From NCBI GenBank assembly GCA_002269645.1, contig NIVC01000530.1, forward strand, positions 310,001-374,000: a DNA stretch of 64,000 nucleotides, written 5' to 3'. Positions 15,171 to 59,795 of the stretch are shown here, piece by piece. Source of the stretch: Macrostomum lignano. Lineage: Eukaryota. The position numbers and the translations under genes are program-made. Every line of letters starts with the position of its first letter. The stretch's first letter is position 1. The notes under the pieces were generated by a model. The model did no database searches. It saw nothing but the letters and a program-made list of their open reading frames with translations, and was not told the DNA's origin.

Positions 15171-18100
15171 ATGTCTGATAAGTTGAACAATGGAAATTTC
15201 AAACTTTCTTTTGCGCTTCTGCATGTGAAAGTCTTCATCTTGTTGTTATTGGTTTCAAAGTAAGTGTGACGGGGGACTTGTGGAAAACTTCATTGTTTTA
15301 CTATCATTTTTACTATCAGTAGACTACTACGTAAGTGTATCATATTTTGTATGAATTCTGTGTACGAGTACATTCATTGAATCGGCTTTTATATGTCAGC
15401 AAGTGATGAATTTTTAACAAATCAATAATTTGCCCAGCGCCCATCGTAACTCTCAGCCTTACAATTCGCTGTATCATCTATCGTTTTATATTAACTGTTC
15501 GTTTTTCGTCGCTACTATAAAAACAAATAAAAAACTTGGCCAACTAAGCAAGCAAAATATATCAATTCAATTGTATATTGGACTGCGCTATGCTTTCATT
15601 TTTCTTCGGTCTTGTTCGGTCTTGTTCTGCCAAGGACTGCCAGATTAAATTCGTCACATTTAATGGAGGGTCCCACCTCGAGATTCGAACCCTGGGTCGA
15701 GACGTGCTACTGCTACACAACTTTCCGATCGGAGGAGGAAGGAGATTGAGGCTGAGCGCAGCGACAATACCCAATTCAGCGCGTTCCTCCCAGTCGTCAT
15801 TCCCCTATGGATCATTTGTGCATCTCGACAATCTAAGTAATGCCATAAATTCAGTCCGCCATCGTATCGCTCGACTCGTATTCTGCATCACCGCAGCAAG
15901 TGGCGGTGGCCTCAAAAGGGCCGTTTTACATTACGTTACACCTCACCTGCCTGCGAAACTCACCATAATCATCTCTATTCGGCGGCGATCATTCAACATT
16001 CAACACTTTCTACATGTTCGTACGTCGTTTCGTCGGTACCCACACGACGTGGCCAGCTCCGACCAACTGCGACCTAAAAGGGCCGTTTCAGTCCATTCAA
16101 CTGTACCGGCTACCCCATTCAGACCTTACCGTCCCGTCAACTGAAAATCTGCAACAGCTGCTCTACACCAAGGTTGATATTTTGCTTGTAAAAATGTAAA
16201 TGCTTCAAATAATTATTGCTTGCACTGTGAAACTAATGTTTTTAATCCAATATCAAAATACATGTACGCATGTATTGTTATAATTCAGTGAGTTTCATCA
16301 TTTTCGCCTTTCATATACATGTCCCTGTCATCTTGTGCTATTAAAATGTTTTTTCTGTTCCATCTTTTGCTTCCGTCTCCTGTCGATCTAGTTTCCTTTT
16401 CCCCAGCAACGGGCCCGTGAGCCGTACCATTTTTTGCTGCGCGGTTCTCGTCAGCCGGGCGCCCTTGGCGTCGTTCAGAGTTCGTTGCGACCTTCTTTGT
16501 GCCTGTCTTTCTCTGCACCTCTGCGTACGTTGGCTGGGAGGCATCTGCGACCCACTGGGGTCGCGCCCGTGCGGTCCATCGGGACCGGCCCAGCGGTGAG
16601 CCGTCTGTTGGCTGGCGCATTCGGCGCGTTGTCTGCTGCATTCTGCAGCGTGATGCTATTCGTACACTAATCTCTACTTTTCTTCTCGCGTGCTGTCGCG
16701 CTCTCTTGTGTGCTTACTAAAAATGTTCCTCAGCTCATTTCGTAATCATTGTCTGCATTTTCACTTATGTTATTCAAATTAATATTGACTACATGTATTC
16801 GAGTGCAAATATCTTTTCTTTTAGAGGAAGGCGAGTGTGACGGGGGACTTGTGGAAAACTTCATTGTTTTACTATCATTTTTACTATCAGTAGACTACTA
16901 CGTAAGTGTATCATATTTTGTATGAATTCTGTGTACGAGTACATTCATTGAATCGGCTTTTATATGTCGGCAAGTGATGAATTTTTAACAAATCAATAAT
17001 TTGCCCAGCGCCCATCGTAACTCTCAGCCTTACAATTCGCTGTATCATCTATCGTTTTATATTAACTGTTCGTTTTTCGTCGCTACTATAAAAACAAATA
17101 AAAAACTTGGCCAACTAAGCAAGCAAAATATATCAATTCAATTGTATATTGGACTGCGCTATGCTTTCATTTTTCTTCGGTCTTGTTCGGTCTTGTTCTG
17201 CCAAGGACTGCCAGATTAATTCGTCACATAAGAACCGAACAAAATACTTTTTTTTTAAATATTGCATCCGATTGGACGTCAAACCTTATTGTGCCGAATT
17301 TCAGACACCATGCCGCAAATCACTATTGTGTGAGCGGACTGACGCTGAGTCTGCGACTCGATGATTTCTACCAAAGAGACGAGCTCATCATTCCGCAACT
17401 GACAGATGAGTCTGAGCGAAGTTTGATAAAGCACAGGACCTGTAAGTGGGCCGTCAAAGCGGACTCCCGAAGGAGGGATCTTCAACTCGTGCTGGAAGGG
17501 CGACCAGCTGGTTCTGGGAAAAACCCTGTCAGTTTAAACATTCGCTACTCGCCGGGTTCAAGAGGATGGGCGGCTGTGTCGCCTGGAATGTTTAGAGTAT
17601 TTCCGTTGGCAAAGGGGCAAGTTTTATTTTGCTGACGTCATACAGTGTTTGCATGTAGCAGGTCATACCTATATAGATAAACGGCATAGCACATGCTAAA
17701 TATAGAGCTTTGCTTTAATTTTGCTTAAAACGCGCGTAACAAAAAGTGAGCTACTAAACACGTCATACAAACAAAAAATGTCTTGCTTGGTGCCTTAGGA
17801 TGATATCGATTCTAATGAAAATTTTCTTTCCAGCAATCAGTTCAATGAGGAGACAAACTGGGATACGAGATACCAGAATAGAAGCACGTCAAACCTGAGG
17901 ATTGTCCTGCCACTTCCCGGGTTCTGCAGCCGGGAAATGCTCAGCTTCAATAGAAAATGCTACGCCGTGAGCTCAGCAAAGCAGAATACTTCAGCCGCAA
18001 TGTCCAGCATTGAAGGCGATGCTCAGCTGGCCAGCTTCTCCAGCATGGCTGAGATCAGCGAGCTCATCGCTGCCAGTGAGTGAGCATCGTCTTAGATTGA

Positions 18101-18826
18101 ACTGTAGGCTATGATTTCGAAATTCAATGACACTTTTTTCATCATTTCAGACGGCGAAAAGCTGCAGGAGTTTCCCTACAGGCGGCCCCTGAGCCTGGGC
18201 CAGCCGGTCCGTCTCGGCATGTTTCTGAACGCATCCGCTGCCACAGTGCTGTCCTTTGTCAGGAGTGACAGCGGTTGCCTGCTGCTACAGCCTGTGACAG
18301 ATTTCAAGGACTTCTTGTAAACTTTTACTGCATTTACTTTGCTCTTGAAATGAAAGAATAACGGAGAGAATATGAATAATTGTTCTTCAGACTATCGGAC
18401 AAAGTGGCGGGACCATGCGTGTCGCTGAGAGTGACTGAGTCAGATACAGCGGTGGTCGAGTTCGTTAACTGCAGCAGCCCGATGCTGTCGCTGCTGAGCT
18501 TCCCGGAGACTGCGCGCTCCTTTCCGAGCTCAGCGAAGTGCAGGGATATAAAGCTTGAGAATCTTATTCGTCTGAACAGCTGTCGTCAAGAAACAGCCTC
18601 AGCTACTTCCACGGTAACTGTCGATGCTCCAATCCAACCTTATTTTTTCGACGAATCCCAAGCCTCAGATTTTAGTTTTCAAATCCTGATTTTGGCCTTG
18701 TGTTTGACTTTCCTGCTGATTTCGGGCATCGCATACTTTGTTGTCGCAAAGTCGGACTCTAGCAATACTCGCGAAGTTCTCAAAGTATTTGTTCGCCGAG
18801 ATCTTAAAGGCATTGAAAATTTATAA
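15171..18826 (+). CDS. Cluster gene A: SP - CUB-like - C-type-lectin-like - TM receptor, 414 aa, intact
   Basis: Exons 15171-15259, 17305-17616, 17834-18075, 18151-18316 and 18391-18826 join in frame (1245 nt). Motifs NHYC, CKWAV, CSREMLSFNRKCY, GDAQLASFSS, PVRLGM, GPCVSL, NCSSPMLSL. TM ILILALCLTFLLISGIAYFVV. Intron 2 needs a GC donor. Confidence 0.75.
15265..17228 (+). mobile_element. Non-autonomous LTR retroelement (TRIM-like) in intron 1 of gene A
   Basis: LTRs 15265-15658 and 16836-17228 (TGTGACG...CGTCACA, about 2 differences). 4-bp TSD TAAG at 15261-15264 and 17229-17232. tRNA-Gln-like PBS TGGAGGGTCCCACCTCGAGATTCGAAC at 15664-15690. PPT AGAGGAAGGCGAG at 16823-16835. No recognisable gag/pol inside. 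Confidence 0.9.
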
Positions 18827-20365
18827 TCTATACGAAGAAGAAACTTGCTGCATTTTTACTAACGGCGTAGCTGTGATGGCTAAATAAATTCAGTAGGTGA
18901 GCCTAGTCGTCCGAGTACTGTAGACTAGAGAATCAAACTTCTACCCGAGATCCCTAGCTCGTCAGCCGCAAAACTAATCTTGTCTAGGTATAGTAGCTCT
19001 ATGCAGCGTCTCTAAAAATATTAAATGTTTTTTTTGCTTCTGAACCTTTATCAATTCACGTGATGATGTATTTTTTAACGATAGCAAGTACGTAAGTAAT
19101 TAATCAAATTGCAAAATTTAAATACAATAAAAAAACGTACATTACATGTTTTTATAATCTAATTTTTAGTATATAGGATGCTTATCCTCACTTGAATTTT
19201 TTGAGGAAACTGTTACCATGAGAGTGCAATGACCCATAGTGTGACATCTGTCTACAACATCAGATATGATTCTCAGCTTTCAAACATGGCCGAGATCAGA
19301 AAGCTGTCAGTATGATAATTAATCCTAAATAGAATATTATTGTTTTTAGACAAGAAAGTTCGTAGACTTTGTAGATCCGTCTTACATGAACCACAAGCCA
19401 CTCTGTCCGTGACCTCAAATGAAGACAGCAGAAGTCAATACTTCAACGGGTTTCATAGAGCAAAGATTTCTAGTTAATGGCCCTTACAATATTCCCCTAG
19501 TTTTGTTGAGTGACAACCAAAAATTGATCATCAGCCGCAGTTGAATTCGATATACCGGTATTAAAATTAAGAAACAAATAAAATGTGCGGCTAGAAACTA
19601 CAGTGTTTTAGCAGAAAAAGTTAAGTATATATAATTGAAAGCCCCTCTGAAGTGCTCCTGCCAACTCTCTAAACTGGTGAAATAAGCGACGATGAGTTAG
19701 GAGAAATAAAAAATAACTGCAGCACAGTCAAGTACATCGAATTATATACTCTCTGGATTGTATTTTCGGTTATCTTCTGAAATTGTCTGTCCAGGTCGGT
19801 GATTACAATTAGTGCAACAGCGAGCGTGAGCGAGGGCGAGAAAGCAAACAATTAGACACTGAATCTTACGTGTCCAGTCCCATTCGTTGTAGAAAATAGC
19901 TAGAAACAACAGGTTAGTCATTGATGCTGTCTGCAGCAGCCACGCTGTTTTACGTCGCAATTAACATTTTCATCTCTCTGTCAGTTTTCTGCATACATTT
20001 TTGTCTCTGCAGTGCATGATAATCTGGATAGCTAGAGTGTTGCGGTCTAATGTACAGATAAAGCATAGAATTGAGTCTTATTTAACTGTGCAAGTACTCA
20101 TTCGTGGCTAACTATCTTAAGTTTAATTATTTTGTCGCACCTACAAACTAAAATTGTCTTCTCAACAGGGCAAGACTGAATCTGGAGCTAAATTTTAACC
20201 GGTGGGAATTCCAAAGACTGGCCAAGGGAATACCATACCAATTTAGATATATATAGAAGGCATAGAAGGCATGTATTACCTTCGAATTGTCTTATCTTTT
20301 CTTCTTTTCTAATTGCACTAGTTGGTTAAATCTCAGAGTTTTGAAAACCCTAACTAGAAAGCGAC

Positions 20366-22307
20366 ATGCCTGAAGAAGTTGGCAGATCACTGTGGTCAGC
20401 ATCAGTTCTACTTCTCTGCTTGTTCTCAGTCTGCAAGCTTAAACCGTAAGTTCAGAAAAGCTCTTTTTCCTTTAACTGTTGCTGAGAAGCTCGAACGAGT
20501 GTATATTTTTTTGAAAGAAAAGAACATAATTCTAGTTATTTATGGTAACATTTTTTATTTACGTCATACGTGATATACGATGTATGACAAATTTGATATA
20601 TGTCATACGTATAGTCTACGTTTGCGCTAGTAGTTTTGATTAAGTTTATTTGAATTGCTGTGACTTCTTAGAATCTGATGTGCATGTAATAATCTGGCGT
20701 ACGCGCTATAACAAAAAGTATTGCATACAATAGCGAACAAAAAAACAGATAAATGCCACAAATTAAGTATCGAATCTTTTTGCAAGTTTGAAAAAAACAA
20801 ACTGCTCGTCAAAAACCTGACAGGTGCCTATCAGAGAATCATTACTGCCCAATGGCCACCGAAGTTACGGTTCTGCTTGACGATTACAGCCACAGAAATG
20901 CGACATTCATTCCGAGAAGTCAAGATGGAATTAACGATGGTCCTATTGTAACGGGGCGCTGCAAGTGGACCGTTAAAATCAAAGCGCCAGAAAATCAGCA
21001 AGTTTTGGTGCAAAGACTTCCCGGAATTCCAGCTAAAAATTCTATCAAGCGAAATTCTAGCCTCCTACAGAATGTACTAATCTCCAACCAAAAAGGACTC
21101 AACGACGAGATACGTAGCGCTTCATTTTCTGTGCATTCAGCGCAAAAAAAGGTAAGCATGTACAAAAAACTCCTATCAAAAAATTTCCTAAATAATTTTT
21201 GCGCATCTTTCTTGTCATAATTTAGAAGCAAGTTTGAAATTTCAATCACCTGGGAGGCGGGCAGCTTAAAATCTTACGGCGACTTAGACAATGTTAGAGT
21301 CATGCTACCAATACCTGGATACTGCAGTCGCACCATGCTGGCCTTCAATGGGAAGTGCTATGCTATGAGTGCAGTTGAAAAAAATGTCACCGACGCCATG
21401 TCCAGCGTCAGGGGCGATGCTCAGCTGGCCAGCTTCTCCAGCATGACTGACATCTGCGAGTTCGTTGCAGCCAGTGAGAAAATGTTTGGTTCAAATGTCA
21501 GAGCCGGTGTTTTATTTTATTTATTGTACACATTGAAAATAAAAAAATAACTTTTTCAGACAAAGCAAGAGCAAATGAGTATCCATACAGACGGCCTCTC
21601 CATCTGAGCCAGCGGGTCCGTCTCGGCATGTTTCTCGATTCAGCCGATGCGACAGTGCTGTCCGTGGTCAGGAGTGACAGCGGCTGCCTGCTGAAGCCTG
21701 TAGCTAACTTGGATGAATTCAGGTGAGACTCAAGCTCAATTATTGATTTACTCGCATACCCGATTGTAATAAAATGTATCTTCGAAACTTTTTCAGAGTA
21801 ACTGGCGGAGTGACAGGTTCATGTCTGTCTCTCAGAGCGACCGGGTCAGACACGGTGATAGTCAAGCTCGGCGACTGCAGCAGCCCGATGCTGTCGCTAC
21901 TGAGCTTCCCGGAGACTGCGCGCTCCGTGCCGAGCTCAGCGCACTGCAATGGCAGCGAGCTGATTGACCGGATCGACCATCTGCTCAGTCCTGCTGCAAG
22001 TCTGTTCTCTAGTTCGATAACTTCTGCTGTCACGACTAGTCCAGATATTAAAGCTGCAGCTATACCATTGGAACCTATAATTGTTTCTGGGTGTGCGGGA
22101 CTTCTAATTTGTGCCGCAGCCGTTTTGATATACTTTTGCTTGAAGCGTCGTTCTGGTCGAAATGCTCAACATTATGGAAACGGAGAACAACCGGCCACCC
22201 AAACTATGCAGGAAAACCAGTTACCACTATTGGAATCACCTCTCGAGAGACGTGAATCAAATCAAGTTGCAGAGTCTACTACAGATCGTCAAGAAAGTTT
22301 AGTGTGA
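20366..22307 (+). CDS. Cluster gene B: CUB-like/CTLD-like TM receptor; apparent +1 frameshift in an A7 run at the end of exon 2
   Basis: Exons 20366-20445 (MPEEVGRSLWSASVLLLCLFSVCKLK), 20824-21151, 21226-21473, 21560-21722 and 21797-22307. Exon 2 is 328 nt where the phase requires 327. The tail ends ESLV. Confidence 0.7.
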
Positions 22308-22874
22308 CATCGAAATTCAGTCGAAATTTGGAAAAGATACTCTCGGTACCGGTATATCAATAGAGAGTAAACAACGAACATTGCTTTCCACTTTAACTGT
22401 TCAGTATATGAAAATTCGCATTTAGTCACATTGTGGAACAATTCTACTTCCGTGCAAACGACGAAAAATAAAAGGTACGTAAATAGAATGCACAGGCGAC
22501 AATATTTTTAGGCAGCTATTTTTAGCTATGACAAAGTTCTATACCTATATGCGAATGTGTCATAAATATATATATAGAAATTACTAAACGCAAGCACGTA
22601 CCATGTACCATGTACTTTTGTATTTTGTTCCTAAAAGAGGGTATCAAACCAATGATATAAATAAGTACCATGATGTTCTAACATCACCCTAGAAAAAATG
22701 CATCAGTGATACTCGGTATGCACTTGTACCGGCAGCATTTGCTTCTTGCTACTTTAACAATACTTTTACCATTGTAAGTACCACTCAAAGAAATAACCAA
22801 ATCAAGCTTATATATGCAAGCGAAACAAGCATACTTGTCCTCATCATGCTTTTTATATTGCATCATTATTTTAG

Positions 22875-24471
22875 AGTCGAGTCAGCCAACCACTACTGCG
22901 TGAACGGACAAACCCTAAGCATTGAACTGGACGATTTCTACCACCGAGACGAGACAATAATTCCTCAGGTTCTGGACTAGCCGAGGCACAAACTGATGAA
23001 GCCAAAGGATTGCAGATGGGAGATCCTACTGATGTCCTCGAATCCAGACCTGCAGTTTGTCCTCGAAGGATTGCACAGCAATGGTAGAAGCAGAGAGATC
23101 AGAGACAAATTCGACAGTAAAAATGCAAGCGCCAGTGTTGTTATGGACTCGAGAACGCGTATTGTTGCAGGCATGTTTCAGGTGCAGCCACTGAATAAGC
23201 GGTGAGTGGCGTAAGACACAAGAAAAATGTTTTGATGGAGAAAGAATTTAATGCAAGTTAACTAATTGATTTCAAACTCTTTCAATTTCAGCAAGCACTT
23301 CTCTCTCACAGCAAGTTGGGATCCTAGAACGCAAAAGCCGCAAGCAGAAAACTTAAGAATATTGTTACCACTGCCTAGATATTGTAGTCGGGACATGCTC
23401 AGCTTCAATGGGAGCTGCTATGCTGTGAGTACAGTTGAGCAAAATTTCACAGAGGTCATGTCCAGCATTGGAGGCGATGCTCAGCTGGCCAGCTTCTCCA
23501 GTCTTGCAGAGATCACTGAGTTCGTTGCTGCTAGTAAGTGCGACATGCATTAATACTGAAAGTTAATTTTAAAATGGTAAAAGCTAATCGGCACTGCTAT
23601 AATCAACCAGATTCCCTAAATCCTTGGCTAACTTGCAGATAACAAAAAGCTGCAGGAGTTCCCGTACAGACGGCCCCTGAGCCTGGGCCAGCCGGTCCGT
23701 CTCGGCATGCTTCTCAACCAATCCAGTGCGTCCGTGATGTCTGCGGTCCGGAGTGACAGTGGCTGTCGGCTGGAGTTGGTTTCAGGCAGCGGTGAATTCA
23801 GGTAAAGTTTGGCTCTGCCATTTTTAATAATAAATGCAAATTAATAACTTGAAGAAGTGATTAATAAAACTTTACTTTTTTACTTTTAAATGCATTTTAG
23901 TGCTTCTGGCGACAGAATAAAAGGTCCGTGCTTGTCTCTTAGGGTTACGAAGTCGAATAGAGTGGTGGTCGAGTTCAGCAACTGCAGCAGCCCGATGCTG
24001 TCGCTGCTGAGCTTCCCGGAAACTGCACGCTCCGTGCCGAGCTCAGCGCACTGCAGCAGCACCGGGATGGCAAATCTGATTGAGCGGCTGGTGAGCCGTT
24101 TATACAAAAATCCGTCAAGTCCAGCTGCTGATGAGGCTGCTACTCCGCCAAAAACAAAAGGACACTCGCCGTGGTGGGCTGTTCGCAGTTTTGCTTTTGT
24201 CGTGGTCGCTATCACCTTGTCGAGCTTAGCATTGGCAGTAGCTGTTTCGGTCTGGCGGAACTGCCGACAGCAGTCGCTGACGAAGTCAATTGACGCCGTG
24301 GAATCTGACAAGTACTCTGACGAGTCACTCATAAATAGTGAAGAAGCTGAGCAACAGACGGTCACTCTTGAAGCTGTAAACAACTCCGTGGACATGCGGA
24401 TCACAGATTGTTGTTTTGCTTTTGTCAGAATATGGCGAAAATTGTGTAATTTACATGTAAGTGACGTTTAA
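22875..24471 (+). pseudogene. Cluster gene C: paralog with premature stop in exon 2
   Basis: Exons 22875-23201, 23292-23533, 23639-23801 and 23901-24471 are phase-correct. In-frame TAG at 22978-22980 (GAG in the relic copy at ~49966). Signal exon not confidently found. Confidence 0.7.
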
Positions 24472-42090: not shown

Positions 42091-43614
42091 ATGGAGTCGC
42101 ACTATCTTCTTCTTGCTGCCATCGCTCTGGTTTTTTCTAAGTAAGTTAAATTTTTTGATTAGATGATGAAATGTCTTTCATTAGATACACCATTAATTGC
42201 ATGCTTGTACTGTGCCCAGGTGTCACTGCATCACTGAGGATATTGAGCTGAACGACGGCAAGAGAGAGTTACTAATCAGTGTAGATTTGAGGAACCGCAG
42301 ACCACAGAGTTGGGAGGTGAGATTGAGCTCTAGAAGCTCCAATCAACAGGTACTGCTTGAAGGAACTGACCTCACTGACAGCGCCTATGCTGTCAGCTAT
42401 TCTCTGGGAACCGACTCAAGAATAGCGACTCGTGGACTATTTCACATCTTTACTCTCCATCAGCAGTAAGTTTTGAAAAAAAAACTTTTTTTAGCATAGC
42501 AGACAATGTTAAGACGCTGTACATGCAGTATTTGACGTCAACTATTCCAGAATGAAACTGCGCATAGAAGCAAAGCTGATACAAAGCGGCAAATGGCAAC
42601 GCAATGTCGCTTCGATCATCTTGAGACTTCGGCTGATAAGCCCTGGAAAGTGCGCCGCTGACATGCTCAGTTATCGAGGCTGGTGCTATGTTGACAGTTC
42701 AGTACCGCAGAATATTACAGAAGCGATGTTGAGCATTAGAGGCAATGCTCAGCTGGCCAGCTTTTCCAGCCTGAATGAGATGCAAGAGCTTATCCGTGCT
42801 AGTGAGTTTTTAAAATACACAATCATATATCTAAGGGCTACGAGCTACTAATACCCTGCTCATTTTCTTACAGACAATAAGCCATTATTAACTCCTCCAT
42901 ACAAGCGAAAAATCGACCTTAAGCAAGCAGCTCGTATCGGCATGTTCCGAGGCGATTCCAAGGCGTCAATAATGTCTCTAATCAATAGTGGCAGCCACTG
43001 CGAATTGCAGCCAGTTCAGCAGTACAAGGATCTCATGTAAGCATTCAATTGACGTGAAAACGTGAAGATTTTCGGCATTACCATTCTAAATTTTATTTGT
43101 TCTTTTTAGTGTAAACAATAAAACAAATGGTAAATGTTGGTCTATACGGGAGGTAACATCTGATGGCGCTGAGATGGAACTGAATGATTGCAACAGTCCA
43201 ATGCCATCACTGATAAGTTTCCAGCAGACAGCCAATTCTGAATTGCTGCATTTCTCCGACTGTCATAGCGACAGCATTATTCACCTAGTGACCGAACTGG
43301 TCGGTTCTTTTGCGAACAACAGATCAACGGTGCTCACAGGCGGCACAATTCCAACCAATTATGATGACAGAAATGGCAATGGAAGTGCTCAATGGGAAAG
43401 CGGCGCTATTGGTAACTCTACGGCGGAATATAGATCCGAGAAAAATACTCTAGGATTATGGGGAATTTTCATCATCGTAACTGCCTTTGTTTTTTTAGTT
43501 TTACTTATTTCTGTTTTCGTCTATCGCTTTCGCAAAAGATTGTGCACTCAAACACAGGATATTCCTGCTGAGAGTGAGCTGGAGGCAATGCATAATTCGA
43601 GGCAAAGTGAATGA
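42091..43614 (+). CDS. Cluster gene D: most divergent paralog, 404 aa
   Basis: Exons 42091-42140 (MESHYLLLAAIALVFSK), 42220-42465, 42551-42801, 42874-43036 and 43110-43614 join in frame (1215 nt). Motifs CAADMLSYRGWCY, GNAQLASFSS, ARIGM, DCNSPMPSL. TM LWGIFIIVTAFVFLVLLISVFVY. Confidence 0.8.
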
Positions 43615-44752: not shown

Positions 44753-47700
44753 ATGCTCGATTATTTAAAAAAATTATCAGCAGTCCTTCTTCATGACAAC
44801 CCTTTGACATCATATATACTGCTGATCTTACTAGTGGCTTTCTTCACCCAGCTGTGAGTGATATTTGATACATATATTAAGGTCGAATGTATAGAGTAAG
44901 TGGGGTTTTAGCCTAGTGGTTAGAGCGTCGGACTCACGACTAAAAGGTCGGGGGTTCGATTCTCGCTCCACTCGGAACAATTTGTGTCGCTTGAACAAGC
45001 ACTTAACTCTAATTTGCTTTAGTTCACCCAGCGGTAAAATGGGTGCCAAAATTAGGGTAGGGGGGGGGGGTAATTGGGGGTGTGTGTGTGTTAGGAACCC
45101 CTCAGTCCTTGCACTTTGGGGCTGGGTAGTCATTTATTGTTATTTTTATCAATGTTATAATTATATTGCCGTCTAATTATAGTAATCGTGAGTTGGCATA
45201 TGTACAGTTAGTACTCACCTATTCATGTCTGCAGATGCCAGTCAGACAATCACCACTGCAGCCCACTGGGCCAGCACGTTCTACCACTCGACAATAGAAT
45301 GAACAAAGACGAGACTCTGATACCGGAGCTGCAGGATGCTGACAGTGTGAAACGATTCGATTACAACCGCTGCCGATGGAGATTCGAGAAGAACTCGAGA
45401 CCGCAGACTGGCGTCCAGTTAGTTGTGCAAGGACTGCCTCTGGCCACTGAATTCAGCCGCTGCGTCAACAAGGCCGAAATTCAAATTAAGAGTTCGTTGG
45501 GATGGAAAAAGACAATTGAAGCCGGATCCCTTCACGTGTTTTCGCTATTTAAGAGGTACTGGTAAATTTTTGCAATCGCGTAGATACTAATGTGTTTTAA
45601 AATAGTAAATGTCATTTAAGTGGTGTGAAAATCAAATTTAAATTCATATATCTATTTGCTCACTTCAGACAGTCGTTAGACATCGAAGCGTACTGGAAGG
45701 CCAACACTCCAGCAGTGGACAGATGCGCCATGAAAGTGCGAGTGCTGGTTCCGATTCAACAAGACTGCAGTCCAGACATGCTCGGATTTCGTGGCAACTG
45801 CTTCGCCCTGAGCACACAGAAACAAAATTTAACAGACGCAATGTCCAACATCGGAGGCGATGCTCAGCTGGCCAGCTTCTCCAGCGTGGCTGACATCGCT
45901 GAGCTTATCGCGGCAAGTGAGTAAAATGATGATTTAAACAAATTTGCAACAAAATATTATGATTGCTGGTACACTGGTTTTAGACACAGCCAGGCAGCAC
46001 AATTACCCATACGAGCGGCCCCTGAGCCTGGGTCAACCGGTCCGTCTCGGCATGTTTCTCAACGCAACCGCTGCTGAAGTTCTGTCACTGGTCAGGAGTG
46101 ACAGCAGCTGTCAGATGCAGCCTGTTGCGAAGCTGTCCAATTTTTCGTAAGTTTTGTGTTCTCGTAGCGTCATTTCGTTACAAACCGGTTTGATTGGCCT
46201 TCATAAGCACTTTATAAAATCGCTGTAAATTTCAGAGCGACTGGCATAGTGACAGGTCCGTGCTTGACACTGAGGGTGAATAAGTCCGACGCAGCGGTGA
46301 TCGAGTTCGGTGACTGCAGCAGCCCGATGCTGTCGCTGATGAGCTTCCCGGAGACTGCGCGCTCCGTGCCGAGCTCAGCAGTGCACTGCAGCGGCAGCGA
46401 ACTGGCGACTCTTCTGGATCGGCTTCAGAGTCGCTTTGCGGATGCCGAGTCCAGTCCAGAGTTTTCTGCTCAAGGGAAAAATAATTCGGCTAGAGAAGGA
46501 AATGAGTTATTTTTCCAGAAGAATCAGGATTTTATCTATCCCGCCATTATCGTTGGTGCACTGCTGCTGATTGCTGTCTTTGTGGTGATGGCGTTCGCGA
46601 TGAAGCTTCGACGGTGTCGCAAGCTGAAATACCTGCTGAATTACGAACCCCAAGAATCTAAACAGCTACGAGTAGATCACACGCAAATTGCTGAGCCACC
46701 AAAAAATTTTGGGAATTATGCTGATGATTACGTGGCCAGTACGTTGTTTCAATTGTCATGAAGTCTTTGTTTCAAGTCCTGTTCTCTGAATGAAGTCTTT
46801 GTTCAAGCCCGATGTCTCACAATTTCAGAGCGACACCCTCAAGCTGACGACATCACAGCGCCTGCTCTGCATACCTCGTCCAGCATTGACAGCCTGGACC
46901 TGCTGGCCGCAGCCAACCGGCCGCTGCTTCGTCAGCAAGAGGTCCCCAGCAGTTTGTCATCCACAGCAGACCTTTACTTGGCCGCCAGGCTGGCCGGGGA
47001 TGAGAGCAGCGAAGATTTCTCAGATTTGGTGCCGAATTCGTCGGACAGGTTCGGACACTCCGATTCCGAGTCTTTGTCCTCCTCTCTGTTGGACTCAGCC
47101 GTTGGTGGCGCCTCTGCAGAGGTGAGTTGGTTCCTGGCTTCATCTGCGAGTCTGTCTGAGTAAACTGAGCTATTTGGGACTTTGTCTGTCTCTCCACCTT
47201 CTGTTTACCACTCTGTCTCTCTCTCTAAACCTCTGCCTACCTGTCTATCTCACCCTTTATTTCACTGTCTACCTCTCTGTCTCATACTATACCTCAATCT
47301 CTACTTTTCTATCTCATCCTGTTCCTTGTCTACCTGTATTTCATCATTCGCACCTGTCTACATATACCTCCCTAATCTATGTGTTAAGCTGCTGATGAAA
47401 AGATTTTACCCACACGTTTATTTATAAATCCTGCTGGAAAAAGATGACAGCTTGCAGCAATTTAACTATGCGTTCCCTGTCTGATGAATAACCTTTATTA
47501 GTACCTCTGAATTAGTTTTAGATAAGGTATATTTATTTACGAGCTACAAATTTTATGTTAATGCTGTTAGCTAGATTAGCAATCCAGTTCGTATAATTAT
47601 TTCCCTTAATCCCCTGCATTTCGCACCTGCAGCCCATTAGCAATAGCCAATCGGCATCCAACGTTAGCCGCCCCAAACAAACGGAGCAGCAGCAACGGAA

Positions 47701-49500: not shown

Positions 49501-49871
49501 GATCACAGCGGATCGCTTCTCCGCTTCCAGCAACTCCTGGTCCAGGTCACCAGTCCCATGGGTCTCTCCTTCCGCCCTGGTGTCGCCGCTCGCCGTCCTC
49601 GTGTCGTCGATCGAACGCCACCTCGGTGAGTTCTTTGTTGTTTCGTAAACTGCCGACGTCTGCATCCTCCATGGAGCCCTGAGCCCTGCGCCTGAGATTT
49701 TGTCAGTCTCTCTTGCAACGCAAGCTTGTCACCAAAACAGAATACATTCGATGTCCTTCGATGCTAAAAATTACGAGCTAAATATTACATATTCTCGTAG
49801 CTCTTACCGTGGCTCTTCAATACCCTTCATTTTCTAGTTGACTTATTTGTACTACTCTTCTCAAAGTCCAG

Positions 49872-50000
49872 TCGGTCAATCACTACTGCGTGACGGGCAA
49901 ACCGAAAGCATTTAACTGGACGATATCCATCGCCGAGACGAGACAATGATTCCTCAGGTTCAGGACGAGCCCAGGCACAAGCTGCACAAACCATTGAAAC
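49872..50000 (+). pseudogene. Relic exon 2 of the receptor family (closest to gene C), frameshifted
   Basis: GTCAATCACTACTGCGTGAC...CGAGACGAGACAATGATTCCTCAGGTT aligns with 22882-22990 but has a 1-nt deletion and a TAA. Confidence 0.7.
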
Positions 50001-50117
50001 CGCCGCCCTTGATACAGACAACACCGCCTACGCAATACAGCCTGATACAGGCCACTGACAGTGCCAGTAGCTCTTGGACTCAGGTCGCTGACCCTGTTCT
50101 TAAAACTGCATCTGACC

Positions 50118-50310
50118 CCTGACACCCCTGACACTGCCGATCCTGACATTGCCAATCCTGACACTGCCAATCCTGACACTGCCAATCCTGACACTGCCAA
50201 TCCTGACACTGCCAATCCTGACACTGCCGATCATGACACTGCCAATCCTGACACTGCCAATCCTGACACTACCCATCCTGACACTGCCCATCCTGACACT
50301 GCCGATCCTC
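50118..50310. repeat. 15-bp minisatellite (CCTGACACTGCCAAT), about 12-13 copies
   Basis: Directly visible. It reads (PDTAN)n in one + frame and is followed by a GTAAG donor-like site at ~50326. Confidence 0.9.
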
Positions 50311-50557: not shown

Positions 50558-50559
<2 letters not shown>

Positions 50560-50597
<38 letters not shown>

Positions 50598-51017: not shown

Positions 51018-53017
51018 ATGGTAAGCCTCACTAAATATTGTCAACCTTATTATTCGAAAAACAATTCAAAGAAATCCAAGCAACTGAAATGCAAAGATAC
51101 TGATAGTTAGATATCAGTATCTTTGCGTCTTGTCTAAGTAGTAAATCTCAAAAATTATACAGACTAATGAAAATGTGATAAAATTTTAGATTACACATCT
51201 GTCGCTTTCGTTGATTGTGTTTTCAATGACGTTCTGTCCGTAAGTGAATCAATAAACGATGAAGATAACTAGATTTCGTAACACTATATATCATGATTTT
51301 TTTATTTCAAATCAAATTGCCCCTTTTTCTTTTTTTGTGACGCAGGTCGACCCAGGAAAACCACTACTGCCTCCATGGAGAGTCGGTCACAGTGCACATA
51401 GACGACTATTACAACCGAAAGGAGACCATCGTTCCCATGATTCTGGGCGAGTCAACTAAAGGCCAACGTAAGCCCAAGCAATGCAGGTGGGACATCCGAT
51501 TAAAGACAGCGAATCCCGGCATGCAACTCGTGATTGCAGCGGTGCCCAGCAAGAAAGACCGATCGACAACTGCCGATGGGGAAGCCAAAATGTCGGTCAA
51601 CTTTTTCAACCGCAATTCTGCGGGATTTAACGTTACGACTGGCATGTTTCAAGTTCTACCAACGACAGAGCAGTGAGTAAAGCTCAAGATGATGCTGTTT
51701 GTCTCGTTAGCGTTCCATGAATCACCGAAAACTTCGCGATTTCATTTCAGTCGGCGCTTCACCGTCGACCTCAAATGGGATCCAGTAATGCAGCAACCGA
51801 GCTCCGACAACCTGAGGATATTGCTGCCGATTCCGGGACAGTGCGGCCGAGACATGCTGTGGTTCAGTGGCAGCTGCTATGCTGTCAGTGCAGTGCGGCA
51901 GAGTATGGCTGACGCTACGGATAGCGTTGGAGGCGATGCTCAGCTGGCCAGCTTCTCCAGCATGGCTGAGATCAGCGAGTTCATCGCTGCCAGTGAGTTA
52001 TCATTAGTTGTCTTTGTAACTGAACTGATCTCAGTTAAACAACTCAAAAACACTTTTCTTTTGTATTGCAGACACGGCAAGGCTGAATGAGTTTCCCTAC
52101 CGAAGTCCTCTGAGCCTGCGCCAGCCGGTCCGTCTCGGCATGTTTCTGAACGCATCCTCTGCCACCGTGCTGACCGCCGTCAGAAGTGACAGCGGCTGCG
52201 TGCTGAAGTCTGAAAAGTTCGAAAACATTACGTAAGTTGTTCAATTTGGATACATCTGGAATCTTCTTTACCAATTTTGCACCACTACTTCTACATCAAT
52301 TTGAAAGCATCGAGTAATTTTCCTGTTCAACAGACAATCTTTTTTGCTCTCATTGATTTTAATTGATTCAGAGCGACTGGTCGAGAGAAAGGTCCGTGCC
52401 TCTCTCTCAGAGTGACCGAGTCCGACAGAGCGGTGGTCGAGTTCGGCGACTGCGGCAGCCCGATGCTGTCGCTGTTGAGCTTCCCGGAGACTGCGCGCTC
52501 CGTGCCGAGCTCAGTAGCGCACTGCAGTGGCAGCGAGGTGGCGACTCTTCTGGATCGGCTTCAGAGTCGCTTTGCGGATGCCGAGTCCAGTCCAGAGTTT
52601 TCTGCTCAGAGGAAAAACTCTTCATCAAGCGGAGGATATGAGTCCTTTTTCCAGAAGAATCAGGCTTTTATCTATCCTGCCATTATCGTTGGTGCACTGT
52701 TGCTGATTGCTGTCTTCGTGGTGCTGGCGTTCGCGGTGAAGCGTCGACGGCGACGGCGTTCTCAGCTGAAAGAATCAAATCCTGAGTCTGTCGTCTTTCA
52801 TCTGCCTGGTGTCCGCCGTTCAGTGTCCACTCGCTCCGATTGCGACGAGGTCACTGACCGAGGCACCTCGGCCGGCGTATTGTTAGAAGATCATCACGGG
52901 AAGGTCGCTATGGAAAAATTACTTTCCAAAGGCAATCAACCTCTGTTAGATGGTCCGCTAAGTTTACGTCGTGAATCGCAGACTTTTGATGTCATTGATT
53001 CTGACATTGCTTTATGA
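51018..53017 (+). CDS. Cluster gene F: 475 aa, apparently chimeric (G-like ectodomain, E-like stalk/TM)
   Basis: Exons 51018-51020 (ATG only, tentative), 51190-51239, 51346-51672, 51751-51992, 52072-52231 and 52372-53017 join in frame (1428 nt). Confidence 0.75.
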
Positions 53018-53943: not shown

Positions 53944-54000
53944 CGATTAAATATTATTGGATATTGGACAGCCACTATACGGAAAATGTGTCAATCTGAT

Positions 54001-56464
54001 ATGAGCTGGTTTCTGGTCATTGGCGTGCTTAGTTCACTGGTCTCCAAGTAAGTGCAGCATCTGAACTGATAAAATTGATTGATGCACTAAAATGCACCAA
54101 ATGTATCAATAGCTAATCTTTTTAGCTATTTTTTAGAATGTGGGTGTGAGCAGTTAGTTTATTTAAAAATAGGTTATAATGTTGTGCACTCTTTTAGTAC
54201 CTTCTGGGATGTCAGCGATGTCTATGCTAATATACGCTCGATGAAAACAGTCACTGGCACCTTCTTGATAGAAGTATTGTCGACTTTATGCACATCACTG
54301 AAACTGCTCACTGAAACACTTCACTGAAGATGCTTAGATTGGCATAAAAAGTTCTTACAAAAGTACACGATAGCACGCATAAAATCAAGCAGCATAAGCT
54401 AGGCAGCTAATGAAACCAAAACAAGCACTATGCTTTAGTCGTTGGCGTAGCTCGAACTTTTTTCACTTGTCCCATTGTAAGTGGTACTTTACCCAGCACA
54501 ATGTACAATGAACTAAGATGTCCTTGGTATCCTGGCTATACTCGTAGATACGTACGGTGACACATGCTGTTCACACCTCGCTGAGCGACTGTTCTCTCAC
54601 TTATTAGGTGAGGTGACACACAGTTTGGAATCTAATTTGCAGATCTGTTGGTGAGAACCACTACTGCATCAACGGAGGAATAAGGATGGTGGAATTGGAT
54701 GAAAACCTCAACTGGAATGAGACGATAGTTCCTCAGTTCCTTAGCAAAACTTCACAAGATCAACTAAAAAAGTGCAGGTGGGACATCAAATTGAAGACAG
54801 CGAATTCCGGCACGCAGCTCATGATTGCAGCGGTGCCCAGCAAAAACAATCGATCAACTGCTGATGGGGAGGTTGAAATGTCGGTCGACTTCTTGAACAG
54901 CAATTCCATCAGCGTTACGACCGGCATGTTTCAAGTTCTACAAGCGACAGAGCAGTGAGTACAGCTCAAACTGATTCTTTTTGTCTTGTTAGCGTTCAAT
55001 TAATCAAAAACATTTTGCGACTTTATTTCAGTCGGCGCTTCACCGTCGAAGTCAGCTGGGATCCACGGAGGCAGGCACCGAGCTCCGACAACCTGAGGAT
55101 TTTGCTGCCGATTCCAGGAAAGTGCGGCCGAGACATGCTGCAGTTCAATGGCAGCTGCTATGCTGTCAGTGCAGTGCGGCAGAGTATGACTGACGCTACG
55201 GATAGCGTTGGAGGCGATGCTCAGCTGGCCAGCTTCTCCAGCATGGCTGAGATCAGCGAGTTTATTTCTGCTAGTGAGTCATTATGAGTTGTCTTCGTAA
55301 TTGACTTTTTTAAGTACGTATCAGCGGCCTCAAGCACACTAATCCTGTCTCATGGAATTGCAGACACGGCAAGGCAGGATAAGTTACCCTACCGACGGCC
55401 CCTGGGTCTGAAACAGCCGGTCCGCCTCGGCATGTTCCACAATGCATCAGCTGCTGCCGTGTTGTCCGCGGTCAGGAGTGACAGCGGCTGCCTTCTGCAG
55501 CTTGTGTCGAATTCGTTTAACTTTTCGTAAGGCTTTGAGTCTGTTGGAATTTTGTTTTTAACTGTTTAAATTTCACCTCTGTCTGTCTACGTCTCGCGTG
55601 TAGGGTAAATTGTGGAGCCAGTTCGAAAATTGATGGCCTTTGGCGCTCGCTGATAAGCTGGACCTTCTCCTTGTATCCTTCCATAATTCGTGTTCAAATT
55701 TCCCTGGGCCCTGTATTACTTAAGCCATCCAAACACGCTGTTGATCTATTCAAATCCAAATCTTTTACCCAGTCGGAATTTCAGTTTGGATTCGGGATTT
55801 ACGTCAGGGACGTCATGCTGGCTCATGCGGAATCTTTATCTCGTATGAGCCAAATAAAGCCCATGAATTGCATGCAGCACAATATTAAAATATTTTCAGA
55901 CTGACTGGCCGAGAGAGAGGTCCATGTCTGTCTCTAAGGGTGACTGACGAAGACTCAGCTGTGGTCGAGTTCGTTAATTGCAGCAGCCCGATGCTGTCGC
56001 TGCTGAGCTTTCCTGAGACTGCGCGCCCCGCGCCGAACTCAACAGCGCACTGCAGCGGCAGCGAGCTCATAAAGCTGGTTCAACTGAAGCTGAGCTATCA
56101 AGTCAGCACAACTCTGAGCCCGAGCCAGATTCATTCTCGGAGAACTCGGATAGCGGTTTTCTCTTCCGTTGGCTTGGGTGTCCCCTTGCTGATTGGCGTC
56201 CTTGTCGGCTTGGCGTGCGTGCTGTACCGGCGACAAAGGAGTTTCGATATCCGAGGAAACAATCCGGAAGGAGACCAACAACAAGACCCTGCAAGGGCCG
56301 TTTCAGCAATCTCAGATAACAATCCGGTAAGACAGCGAAACCCAGTAATGTCCGGCTTCAGACGTCTGTCTTCATTCCGTCAAAGTTGCCGAGAAAGAGG
56401 GGACCGTGGAATTGCATTAGCGGAACAAAACGCACCGCTTGACCCCAACGCTAATCAACCATAA
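54001..56464 (+). CDS. Cluster gene G: 442 aa, intact
   Basis: Exons 54001-54047 (MSWFLVIGVLSSLVSK), 54643-54954, 55032-55273, 55364-55526 and 55900-56464 join in frame (1329 nt). TM IAVFSSVGLGVPLLIGVLVGLACVLY. Confidence 0.8.
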
Positions 56465-58610: not shown

Positions 58611-59104
58611 TAGACAAGTGTATATTAGAATATTGATTCTGATGGATTCAGCAAACAGTTTGTATTGGCGTAATGTGTACAGGGACAGCAAAAAACATTT
58701 TTGTAAACATTTTAAGTAAAAAATCAGTTTGTGCAAAAAATATTAAAAATTTATTAATTTTATTAATCCAGCATGCATCTTTGGATGTACGCTCGTAGAA
58801 GTAACGTTCGAAGCTTGCAGCAAAATACACTGAAAATAAGTCTAGCCTACTCAGATTCAGTAGTGTAGAACGCTCTCTATTTTTATCTCAAGTTTTTCCG
58901 GATTTTTTACTACTTAAAAAAATTTTGCCTCGGAGATTTGCCCCCTCATGGGCGATCCTGGGAAAAATTTTTAGACCAAAAATTAAATCATAAATCATAA
59001 ATCACAAATCATAATTCTGCTCTGGTGATTTTTGCACTCATAAATAATGGAAACTGATACAAGTTCCAAGTTATAACTAAGCCTGGCTCTTGTCTCAATT
59101 GCAG

Positions 59105-59795
59105 AACCAACTCAGCTAATCACTACTGCGTGAACCGGCACACACTACGACTAGAAATGGACGACTTCCATCACCGGGACGAGACCATAATTCCCTGGCT
59201 GCCTGACGAGACCGAGCACAGCAGGCTGCTGGAGTCGAAGAGGTGCCGCTGGAATGTCAAGCTCAAATCGCCGAAGCCCAGTCAGCAGCAGGTTGTCCTC
59301 GAAGGAGTGCCTAGCAGCGGAGGAATGGAGGAATGGAGGAGTTCAACCTTGGCAAATCAAACAGAGATACCGCTAGAAATTCTGGGAATCAGTGCTCATG
59401 CTTCCCAGGCTGTAGGCGTTGGCACGTTGCGTGTGATTGCATTGAATAAAATGTAATAATTTTCCTTCATAAAACATGAATACAGACAATTTCACCCGGA
59501 TTCTTAAATTATTACCAAATTTGCTGTTACCTCGCCACACCTTAACCCAACAGGGAGTTCTTCTCCGTCAGAGCAAATTATAATCCTAGGCGGCAAAAAA
59601 TGCAGCTGAAAAAGCTTAGGATTGCCATGCCACTTCCCAGAGTCTGCAGTCGAGGCATGCTCAACTATAACGGCAAATGCTACGCTTTGAGCACGGTTGG
59701 ACAGAATTTAACAGCCGCAATGTCCAGCATCAGAGGCGATGCTCAGCTGGCCAGCTTCTCCAGCATGTCTGAGATCAGCGAGTTCGTTTTTGCCA
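59105..59795 (+). pseudogene. Cluster gene H: exons 2-3 only; exons 4-5 absent from the window
   Basis: Exon 59105-59452 (NHYC...KRCRWNVKL) and ~59572-59795 (CSRGMLNYNGKCY...GDAQLASFSS). No PVRLGM exon precedes the retrotransposon. The gene could be completed beyond 64000. Confidence 0.6.

What the first reader, a model, noticed from the sequence alone, without database searches (positions are those of the whole stretch)
15171..59795. Tandem family of CUB-like + atypical C-type-lectin-like type I receptors with hypervariable tails: candidate undescribed immune or allorecognition complex
Seen: eight same-strand paralogs (A-H) plus relics sharing exon structure and intron phases (2,2,1,2). They have a near-invariant GDAQLASFSS / PVRLGM / CSSPMLSLLSFPE core, a highly divergent N-terminal domain, and unrelated stalks and tails. 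Known: the N-terminal Cys and CxWxI match the first CUB disulfide, CxxxMLxFxGxCY...AxLAS matches the long-form CTLD start, and clustered, rapidly evolving, variable-tailed receptors typify NK-complex lectins, KIR/LILR and Hydractinia Alr loci. Inferred: a lineage-specific recognition system. I do not recognise it as a named family.
Basis: partly seen in the sequence, partly recalled or inferred. Interest (0 to 1): 0.82.

Follow-up and report, generated by a model that had tools for sequence, protein, structure and literature searches.

The report
Flatworm-specific CUB-like/lectin-like receptor gene cluster
The window holds a tandem array of eight copies (four clearly intact, the rest damaged or doubtful) of a membrane-receptor gene family found so far only in the flatworm Macrostomum lignano; each protein carries a variable CUB-like head on a conserved, sugar-site-less C-type-lectin-like domain, and nothing yet shows it is an immune or self-recognition system.

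Summary
The window is Macrostomum lignano.

**Domains**
[quoted passage not shown] A 27-sequence family profile hits only CTLDs in the PDB (CD69, E 1.4e-5). An AlphaFold model (pLDDT 81) matches almost only CTLDs in Foldseek.
- It lacks the C1-C4 disulfide and the EPN/WND calcium and sugar motifs. Pfam sees nothing.
- The N-domain is CUB-like by fold only. Foldseek top hits are mostly CUBs, but hhalign against CUB gives 2% probability and Pfam gives no hit.

**Distribution**
An exhaustive profile search of 1.84 billion proteins found 39 representatives. All 20 I traced are M. lignano. Other contigs carry further tandem arrays.

**State of the copies**
- D, E, G and H are intact.
- B has an unusual splice.
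- A has lost its phase-2 donor.
- C has a TAG nonsense codon.
- I stops after exon 3, next to a gypsy-type retrotransposon.

**Evolution**
Synonymous divergence differs 4-5-fold between exons, which indicates gene conversion. All estimable dN/dS values are below 1. No ITIM or ITAM was seen.

The immune or allorecognition reading remains untested. This is an undescribed lineage-specific variant of a known kind.

The parts
15171..18826 (+). Copy A. Exons 15171-15259, 17305-17620 (or -17604), 17834-18075, 18151-18316, 18391-18826. Doubtful or pseudogene.
   Evidence: The canonical phase-2 donor of exon 2 is missing, and CAA|gtttta gives a frameshift. Only a weak cryptic donor after 17604 keeps the frame. 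Intron 1 is enlarged by a 397-bp direct duplication.
19205..19312 (+). Relic of the first CTLD exon (GNCY...SQLSNMAEIRKL)
   Evidence: hmmsearch of six-frame ORFs with the family HMM, E 0.0046, HMM positions 163-200. Translation.
20366..22307 (+). Copy B. Exons 20366-20445, 20824-21159, 21226-21473, 21560-21722, 21797-22307. ORF intact; intron 2 is atypical.
   Evidence: Database protein P0020 is 100% identical in exon 2. It uses AAG|gtaagc with a phase-0 acceptor, which skips the last N-domain strand.
22718..24471 (+). Copy C. Exons 22718-22773, 22875-23201, 23292-23533, 23639-23801, 23901-24471. Nonsense codon TAG at 22978-22980.
   Evidence: P0015 (93% identical) has Glu at that codon.
42091..43614 (+). 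Copy D, the most divergent. Exons 42091-42140, 42220-42465, 42551-42801, 42874-43036, 43110-43614. Intact; lacks the CxW cysteine.
   Evidence: P0016 is 92-94% identical.
44753..46761 (+). Copy E. Exons 44753-44853, 45235-45555, 45669-45916, 45984-46146, 46236-46761. Intact. Database model P0045 splices the tail on to further exons (to about 47121, and 47672-47954).
   Evidence: Exon 1 is confirmed by P0017.
49842..50119 (+). Relic of exon 2 (SVNHYCVTG.. / LDDIHRRDETMIPQVQDEPRHKL). Frameshifted; runs into a 15-bp microsatellite.
51346..53017 (+). Copy G. Exons 51346-51672, 51751-51992, 52072-52231, 52372-53017. ORF intact; signal-peptide exon not found.
   Evidence: P0002/3/4 are 86-93% identical.
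54001..56464 (+). Copy H. Exons 54001-54047 (or from 53986), 54643-54954, 55032-55273, 55364-55526, 55900-56464. Intact.
   Evidence: The H part of the fused model P0001 is 93-100% identical.
59105..59795 (+). Copy I. Only exons 2 (59105-59452) and 3 (59554-59795). No later exons before the window ends; a retrotransposon follows.
   Evidence: The fused model P0001 also ends at ...SEISEFVFA.

Best explanation
This is one tandem array of a multigene family known so far only from Macrostomum lignano. It encodes single-pass type I membrane glycoproteins.

**Shown**
- Each protein has a signal peptide and a roughly 115-residue, highly diverged, all-beta N-domain with one Cys pair (NHYC...CxW).
- Next comes a conserved long-form C-type-lectin-like domain, encoded by three exons.
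- That CTLD keeps the N-terminal hairpin cysteines and the C2-C3 pair. It lacks C1-C4 and the EPN/QPD and WND calcium and sugar ligands.
- A helical stalk, one TM helix and a 24-90-residue tail follow.
- The array changes by birth and death: tandem duplication (G/H), a nonsense codon (C), loss of a splice site (A), truncation beside a retrotransposon (I) and exon relics.
- Exon-scale gene conversion or recombination keeps the CTLD exons alike and reshuffles the 3' halves (E/G).

**Inferred**
- The proteins are cell-surface binding receptors.
- The membrane-distal CUB-like head, and the variable loop between SDSGC and GPC (the CTLD long-loop position), carry ligand specificity.
- The calcium-site-less CTLD serves as a conserved scaffold or common-partner module. 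It probably binds protein rather than sugar, as NK-type CTLDs do.
- The short, motif-poor tails suggest adhesion, capture or co-receptor roles rather than autonomous signalling.

The physiological ligand and tissue are unknown. An immune role is one possibility and not the demonstrated one.
For: - **Copies and gene models:**
- **Organism and restriction:** one search gave only M. lignano hits. One search found 39 representatives among 1.84 billion proteins. All 20 I traced are M. lignano.
- **CTLD:** all 39 PDB profile hits are CTLDs, with CD69 at 1.4e-5 (weaker with 9 sequences). The AF2 model has pLDDT 81 and pTM 0.83. In Foldseek, 49 of the 50 best hits are CTLDs, with probability 1.0 and TM 0.5-0.68.
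- **CUB-like head:** Foldseek top hits are Neto2, neuropilin, meteorin, PCPE, MASP and spermadhesin CUBs.
- **Topology:** Kyte-Doolittle TM scores of 2.5-3.3 and 4-7 sequons per ectodomain.
- **Gene conversion, pair E-G:** dS is 0.21 in the first 126 codons of exon 5. It is about 1.0 in exons 3-4 and saturated in exon 2.
- **Gene conversion, pair G-H:** dS is 0.12 in exon 3 and 0.5-0.9 elsewhere.
- **Gene conversion, E versus P0017:** P0017 differs from E by a patch that matches the G/H type.
- **Purifying selection:** dN/dS is 0.13-0.9.
- **Other arrays with the same exon boundaries:**
Against: - No transcript, protein, expression or binding data were available, so receptor function is inferred from architecture only.
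- The CUB assignment rests on a model with pLDDT about 55-80 in that domain, and on UniProt's automatic names for eight members.
- Sequence tests for CUB failed.
- Half of the copies in this window are damaged or doubtful.
- dS is saturated for most N-domain pairs, so selection on the head cannot be judged.
Confidence: 0.65

Rival explanations
1. One reading: a germline-encoded innate immune pattern-recognition or allorecognition complex. The variable heads would recognise microbes or non-self tissue, and the variable tails would signal.
For: - The family is tandemly clustered, lineage-restricted and turns over by birth and death.
- The head domain is divergent.
- By fold, the CTLD resembles NK and myeloid receptors.
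- In C. elegans, proteins combining CTLD and CUB domains are pathogen-regulated. [quoted passage not shown]
Against: - No ITIM, ITAM or charged TM residue is visible in the tails or TM (sequences).
- dN/dS is below 1 wherever it can be estimated.
- There are no calcium or sugar-binding motifs.
- There are no expression or polymorphism data.
- Several dispersed arrays exist rather than one complex.
- Established biology: M. lignano is solitary, so tissue allorecognition has no evident role.
Confidence: 0.2
2. Reproductive recognition. The receptors would sit on sperm, eggs or the female antrum and mediate sperm-partner or sperm-egg interaction in this outcrossing hermaphrodite, diversifying under sexual selection or conflict.
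For: - The family is lineage-restricted and diverges quickly between paralogs.
- Spermadhesin CUBs are among the structural matches.
- Macrostomum reproduction-related genes are reported to evolve rapidly (PMC7336406, title and abstract seen).
Against: - No expression evidence.
- The family's gene identifiers were not found in the supplements of PMC7336406 or PMC5816591.
- dN/dS is below 1.
Confidence: 0.1
3. Co-receptor or auxiliary subunit. The proteins would work together with the neighbouring Ig-like membrane protein family, or with channels as Neto, SOL or LEV-10 type CUB proteins do, rather than binding foreign ligands.
For: - A P0043-like 'Ig-like domain' gene lies directly upstream in the window.
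- The same family flanks CUB-CTLD copies on both sides in L003.
- It is fused to family members in model P0029.
- The best Foldseek hits of the head are Neto2 CUBs.
- The tails are short and motif-poor.
Against: - The adjacency may only reflect segmental duplication.
- Pfam finds no domain in P0043.
- No interaction data exist.
Confidence: 0.07
4. A mostly decaying, functionless array: leftovers of duplication in a repeat-rich, recently polyploid genome.
For: - There are two relics, one nonsense codon, one lost donor and one truncated copy.
- A macrosatellite and a retrotransposon lie inside the array.
Against: - Four copies keep full ORFs with canonical splice sites.
- All cysteines and the hydrophobic core are conserved.
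- dN/dS is 0.13-0.45 in the CTLD exons.
- Divergent members on other contigs keep the same architecture.
Confidence: 0.05

Closest known systems
C. elegans CLEC proteins that combine CTLD and CUB domains (for example CLEC-4, CLEC-41, CLEC-42)
   Same: - Large, lineage-specific invertebrate CTLD families.
- CTLD and CUB-type domains occur in one polypeptide.
- About 288 CTLD proteins exist in C. elegans, half of them with extra domains such as CUB (PMC8051790).
   Different: - Those proteins are secreted, often have two CTLDs and two CUBs, and are recognised by standard domain models.
- Here there is one CUB-like head N-terminal to one CTLD on a type I TM anchor.
- Neither domain passes Pfam.
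- No sequence homology beyond the CTLD superfamily level was found.
Vertebrate NK-complex and myeloid C-type lectin-like receptors (CD69, Ly49, CLEC5A, LOX-1, DC-SIGN/DC-SIGNR, BDCA-2)
   Same: - Best sequence and structure matches of the conserved domain.
- Long-form CTLD.
- Like CD69 and Ly49 it lacks the calcium and sugar motifs.
- The genes are clustered and tandemly duplicated.
   Different: - The vertebrate receptors are type II membrane proteins with the CTLD at the C-terminus, and they keep the C1-C4 disulfide.
- These are type I, lack C1-C4 and carry an extra N-terminal beta-sandwich.
- They show no ITIM, ITAM or adaptor-pairing charged TM residue.
CUB-containing type I membrane proteins (Neto1/2, neuropilins)
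   Same: - The head domain's best Foldseek matches.
- Membrane-distal CUB on a single-pass type I protein.
- The first CUB disulfide and the CxWxI stretch are present (one search aligns exactly this stretch).
   Different: - The second CUB disulfide is absent.
- No Pfam CUB hit.
- hhalign probability is 2%.
- No LDLa, FV/VIII or MAM domains; a CTLD follows instead.
Hydractinia Alr and KIR/LILR-type clusters
   Same: Only the genomic style: tandem arrays of surface receptors with variable membrane-distal domains and variable tails.
   Different: - Those families are built of Ig-like domains and have documented polymorphism or signalling motifs.
- Neither feature is shown here.

Membership tests
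[quoted passage not shown] | CTLD double-loop alpha/beta fold | tested here: met
   The AF2 model of P0002 (about 90% identical to copy G) has pLDDT 81, and 85-95 in this domain. In Foldseek PDB, 49 of the 50 best hits are CTLDs, with probability 1.0 and TM 0.5-0.68.
[quoted passage not shown] | Statistically significant sequence similarity to known CTLDs | tested here: met
   A 27-sequence profile against PDB sequences gave CD69 E 1.4e-5 and CLEC4M 2.9e-4. All 39 hits are CTLDs, aligned in register at the domain start.
[quoted passage not shown] | Match to Pfam Lectin_C (PF00059) by single sequences | tested here: not met
   No hit at E<=10 (2 spliced window proteins and 9 relatives) or at E<=1 (27 relatives).
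[quoted passage not shown] | Conserved cysteines: C0-C0' (long form), C1-C4, C2-C3 | tested here: inconclusive
   C0/C0' (PGxC...GxCY) and C2/C3 (GPC...xxC) are conserved. C1 and C4 are both absent: CD69's C1 aligns to M/S, and the domain ends SLLSFPE. Two extra conserved Cys are present (SDSGC, AHC). See the alignment.
Calcium-dependent carbohydrate-binding C-type lectins | EPN/QPD and WND calcium-site-2 and sugar ligands | tested here: not met
   The alignment shows no EPN or QPD before GPC. The WND position reads (E/K)(F/L)x(D/N)C. WIGL is degenerate, (V/A)R(L/I)GM.
CUB domain | About 110-residue beta-sandwich of CUB topology | tested here: met
   In the AF2 model of P0006 the N-domain has pLDDT about 55-80 only. 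Foldseek PDB top hits are Neto2, enteropeptidase, meteorin, neuropilin, PCPE-1, MASP, C1r and spermadhesin CUBs, with E 5e-5 to 1e-2. The C. perfringens enterotoxin C-domain scores similarly, so this is a fold-level result of moderate confidence.
CUB domain | Sequence or profile similarity to CUB (Pfam PF00431; profile-profile) | tested here: not met
   No Pfam CUB hit. The N-domain profile against PDB gave no CUB; the best hit was PD-1 at E 0.05. hhalign against four Pfam-validated CUBs gave probability 2.1%, with 26 columns around CxWxI. UniProt's automatic name for eight members is 'CUB domain-containing'.
CUB domain | Two disulfides (C1-C2, C3-C4) | tested here: not met
   Only one conserved Cys pair is present (C6, C42 of the alignment). 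Copy D lacks even the second Cys.
NK-complex-type or paired immune receptor cluster | Type II orientation (NKC), ITIM/ITAM tails or a charged TM residue for adaptor pairing | tested here: not met
   The proteins are type I, with an N-terminal signal peptide and a C-terminal TM. Reading the tails and TM segments by eye shows no (I/V/L/S)xYxx(I/V/L), no YxxL/I pair and no charged TM residue.
Polymorphic allorecognition locus (Hydractinia Alr, Botryllus fuhc type) | Extreme allelic polymorphism and a fusion/rejection biology | not testable with these tools
   No population data. Near-identical database counterparts are 92-100% identical in both the head and the CTLD, but whether they are alleles, homeologs or assembly differences is unknown.
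Taxonomically restricted (Macrostomum) gene family | No detectable homologues outside the lineage | tested here: met
   A word-indexed search of 5.8 billion proteins gave 10 hits, all M. lignano. An exhaustive HMM search of 1.84 billion representatives gave 39 hits. All 20 I traced are M. lignano. The other 19 were not traced. Other Macrostomum species may simply be absent from the databases.

The most novel reading that the evidence does not exclude
The array would be part of a macrostomid-specific surface recognition system. A diversifying CUB-like head on a gene-conversion-homogenised, sugar-independent CTLD would work with the recurrently adjacent Ig-like membrane protein family. Together they would form a receptor-ligand or co-receptor pair used for non-self (microbe), mate or gamete discrimination. 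This would be an independently invented recognition system in flatworms.
Probability: 0.15. Interest if true: 0.75.

Novelty: new variant of a known kind. Interest (0 to 1): 0.45.

Why it matters
Lineage-specific expansions of CTLD receptors are a recurring way for invertebrates to build recognition repertoires. Flatworms are poorly explored in this respect, and M. lignano is a transgenic, RNAi-tractable model.

This family is invisible to Pfam and is annotated only as 'hypothetical' or under spurious automatic names. Defining its architecture gives a concrete and testable candidate receptor repertoire: a CUB-like head, a calcium-site-less CTLD and a type I anchor.

It also offers a clear case of exon-scale gene conversion. 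The scaffold stays constant while the heads and tails diverge.

If the family proves to be immune or reproductive it would be a new recognition system. If not, it remains an ordinary example of birth-and-death evolution of a surface-protein family.

Tried and rejected
- **Pfam.** I scanned two spliced window proteins, then 9 and then 27 relatives. There was no CUB or Lectin_C hit, only noise.
- **N-domain profile against PDB sequences.** No CUB hit. There was a weak PD-1 IgV hit (E 0.05), which I do not consider meaningful.
- **hhalign of the N-domain against CUB.** Probability 2%.
- **Spliced window proteins.** Database relatives were modelled instead.
- **First AF2 run.** With 9 sequences it failed on the CTLD (pLDDT 30-40). 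A 27-sequence alignment fixed this.
- **Signal-peptide exons of G and I.** Not found by an ATG...GT phase-2 scan or by DNA similarity to H.
- **Mlig-tuf2.** This is a described M. lignano-specific, intestine-enriched gene with weak IgV and CLECT hits and an RNAi fasting phenotype (PMC12732829). It looked like a possible member. It is a secreted CTLD-plus-Ig protein and scores -1.9 bits against the family HMM.
- **Literature.** Searches for the family or its gene identifiers found nothing in main texts and nothing in the supplements of four papers.
- **Failed call.** One listing of cluster members timed out.
- **Positive selection.** The pairwise Nei-Gojobori method gives dN/dS below 1 everywhere. 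dS is saturated for most N-domain pairs, so that test is uninformative there.

Full report
**What is there**

The window is eukaryotic. tblastn with the four domain-coding exons of one copy locates eight copies and two relics between 15.1 and 59.8 kb. hmmsearch of all six-frame ORFs with a family HMM gives the same result, and finds nothing on the - strand or in the first 15 kb.

A protein search identifies the organism. All 10 hits are Macrostomum lignano, and several are 92-100% identical to window copies. For example, B exon 2 matches P0020 at 100/100 residues, and H exons 3-5 match P0001 at 98-100%.

**Gene models**

I read splice sites directly. The plan has five exons:
- exon 1: signal peptide
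- exon 2: most of the N-domain
- exon 3: the last N-domain strand plus the first third of the conserved domain
- exon 4: the middle of the conserved domain
- exon 5: the end of the conserved domain, stalk, TM and tail

Intron phases are 2,2,1,2. Database proteins confirm several junctions and first exons:
- P0005, P0015 and P0017 confirm exon 1 of the H-like, C and E genes.
- ...FISA|N|TARQ confirms the phase-1 junction.

State of each copy:
- **D, E, G and H** have full ORFs and canonical sites. Exon 1 of G was not found.
- **B** has only a weak phase-2 donor. Its 100%-identical database model uses a strong phase-0 donor/acceptor pair that removes the last N-domain strand.
- **A** has no usable phase-2 donor (CAA|gtttta). 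It is frameshifted unless a weak cryptic site is used.
- **C** has TAG at 22978-22980, where P0015 has Glu.
- **I** stops after exon 3. A degenerate Ty3/gypsy-like element follows.
- **E** probably continues into additional tail exons, according to P0045.

All seven full-length copies have one strong TM helix, tails of 24-90 residues and 4-7 N-glycosylation sequons. They are therefore type I membrane glycoproteins.

**How variable**

Mean pairwise amino-acid identity:

| Region | Identity |
|---|---|
| N-domain | 29% (range 16-61%) |
| Exon 3 | 52% |
| Exon 4 | 61% |
| C-terminal CTLD part | 70% |
| Stalk, TM and tail | 22% |

Within the conserved domain, the stretch between SDSGC and GPC is the variable one.

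The tails are not all unrelated:
- E and G share the stalk and TM (88% nt over 384 nt, starting 5 nt before exon 5).
- B and G share a C-terminal PLL..PL..RRES motif.

**Gene conversion**

Synonymous divergence is strongly heterogeneous along single gene pairs:
- **E-G:** dS is 0.21 in the first 126 codons of exon 5. It is about 1.0 in exons 3-4 and saturated in exon 2.
- **G-H:** these are a recent duplicate, 82% identical over 741 nt including introns. Their dS is 0.12 in exon 3 and 0.5-0.9 in the other exons.
- **E versus P0017:** the database counterpart of E differs by a patch of four residues that matches the G/H type.

This indicates exon-scale gene conversion or recombination. The CTLD exons are homogenised and the 3' halves are reshuffled.

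Every estimable pairwise dN/dS is below 1 (0.13-0.9). dS is saturated for most N-domain pairs. The youngest pair, G-H, gives 0.26 in the head. 'Highly diverged' is therefore shown. 'Rapidly or adaptively evolving' is not.

**What the domains are**

Pfam finds neither CUB nor Lectin_C in any of 29 proteins.

*Conserved domain.*
- A 9-sequence family profile against PDB sequences gave only sub-threshold hits, but all nine were CTLDs.
- With 27 diverse members the hits became significant: CD69 at 1.4e-5, CLEC4M/DC-SIGNR at 2.9e-4, then BDCA-2 and DC-SIGN.
- All 39 hits were CTLDs, aligned in register at C0...C0'...alpha1.
- AlphaFold2 with the shallow alignment failed on this domain.
- With 27 sequences it gave pLDDT 81 and pTM 0.83, with 85-95 across the domain.
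- In Foldseek, 49 of the 50 best hits were CTLDs, with probability 1.0 and TM 0.5-0.68. They include BDCA-2, LOX-1, Reg3, DCIR, mincle, langerin, dectin-2, CLEC5A and Ly49.

The conserved domain is therefore a long-form CTLD. It is atypical in these ways:
- C1 and C4 are both missing.
- WIGL reads VRLGM.
- There is no EPN/QPD or WND, so calcium-dependent sugar binding is unlikely.
- Two extra cysteines are conserved.

*N-domain.*
- Its best Foldseek matches are CUB domains: Neto2, neuropilin, meteorin, PCPE-1, MASP, C1r and spermadhesins.
- The C. perfringens enterotoxin C-domain comes close behind.
- Sequence-level tests fail. The N-domain profile finds no CUB in the PDB.
- hhalign against four Pfam-validated CUBs gives 2% probability, aligning only the CxWxI stretch.
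- Only the first CUB disulfide is present.
- UniProt's automatic name for eight members is 'CUB domain-containing'. This is weak support.

I call the head CUB-like by fold, not a demonstrated CUB family member.

**Distribution**

An exhaustive HMM search of 1.84 billion representative proteins found 39 with E<=1e-3. All 20 that I traced to a source are M. lignano.

Divergent members keep the same architecture: signal peptide, head, CTLD and TM. Examples are P0024, P0025, P0031, P0032 and P0034, at 20-25% identity.

Loci from the Mlig_3_7 assembly carry further same-strand arrays with the same exon boundaries in the HMM:
- four copies or relics on NIVC01000413.1
- one on NIVC01000958.1
- two on NIVC01001089.1
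- three on NIVC01000648.1

The family is therefore multi-locus, not one complex. No paper describing it was found. A described species-specific CTLD gene, Mlig-tuf2, is unrelated.

**Interpretation**

The best-supported account is a Macrostomum-restricted family of type I surface receptors. Each has a diverged CUB-like head on a conserved, sugar-site-less CTLD. The family evolves by tandem birth and death with gene conversion.

Ligand-binding function, and its location in the head and the variable loop, are inferred from architecture.

The immune or allorecognition reading is not excluded, but it has no direct support:
- no signalling motifs
- dN/dS below 1
- no expression or polymorphism data
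- a solitary animal

The closest known architecture is that of the C. elegans CTLD-plus-CUB CLEC proteins, which are secreted and pathogen-regulated (PMC8051790). The closest structural relatives of the CTLD are NK-complex and myeloid receptors. Those are type II proteins and keep C1-C4.

**Verdict**

The domain calls are largely right. I rate it an undescribed lineage-specific variant of a known kind, with interest about 0.45.

Noticed in passing
window 1892-6440 and 6559-11106: A near-perfect (99-100%) inverted repeat with roughly 4.55-kb arms and a 118-nt spacer. It fills the large gap between exons of the upstream + strand gene. It could be a real palindrome or a long-read hairpin (missed-adapter) assembly artefact.
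   Followed up: partly
window 143-1853 and 11180-12027 (+ strand); L003 1299-4001 and 23323-25331: The upstream neighbour is a different membrane-protein gene. It matches the fused database model P0043 ('Ig-like domain-containing'; Pfam finds no domain). The same family flanks CUB-CTLD copies on both sides in L003 and is fused to family members in model P0029. The two families are therefore recurrently adjacent.
   Followed up: partly
window ~24970-42000: A macrosatellite of about 1.22-kb units separates copies C and D. Six consecutive units are 91-100% identical in the compared stretches; up to 10 units were detected, and the outer ones are more diverged or rearranged. It shows strong GC skew and contains internal 30-bp and 111-141-bp sub-repeats.
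   Followed up: partly
window 60621-64000: A Ty3/gypsy-type LTR retrotransposon lies directly after the truncated copy I. It has gag with a zinc knuckle, aspartic protease, RT, RNase H and the integrase zinc domain, on the + strand. The reading frame is broken several times and it runs off the window end.
   Followed up: partly
window 15263-15659 and 16834-17229: A 397-bp direct repeat (99.5% identical) lies inside intron 1 of copy A. It brackets about 1.17 kb of unrelated sequence and enlarges that intron to about 2 kb.
   Followed up: no
window 50127-50309 and 12553-12785: A 15-bp microsatellite (12 copies) lies directly after the relic exon 2. A 30-bp minisatellite (7.8 copies) lies downstream of the upstream gene.
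   Followed up: no
window 48346-48384 and 53905-53943: A 39-bp match (95% identical) lies about 60-100 bp upstream of H exon 1, with a second copy about 1.5 kb upstream of the relic exon 2. It may be a remnant of a shared promoter or 5' region of a lost copy.
   Followed up: no
window 51930-51999, 59733-59802; L001 11404-11447 and 16779-16848: The 3' end of exon 3, which encodes GDAQLASFSS..EISEF, together with its donor site, is 90-95% identical at the DNA level. This holds even between otherwise 65-70% identical paralogs and between contigs. It could be a gene-conversion hot spot or reflect an extra nucleotide-level constraint.
   Followed up: partly
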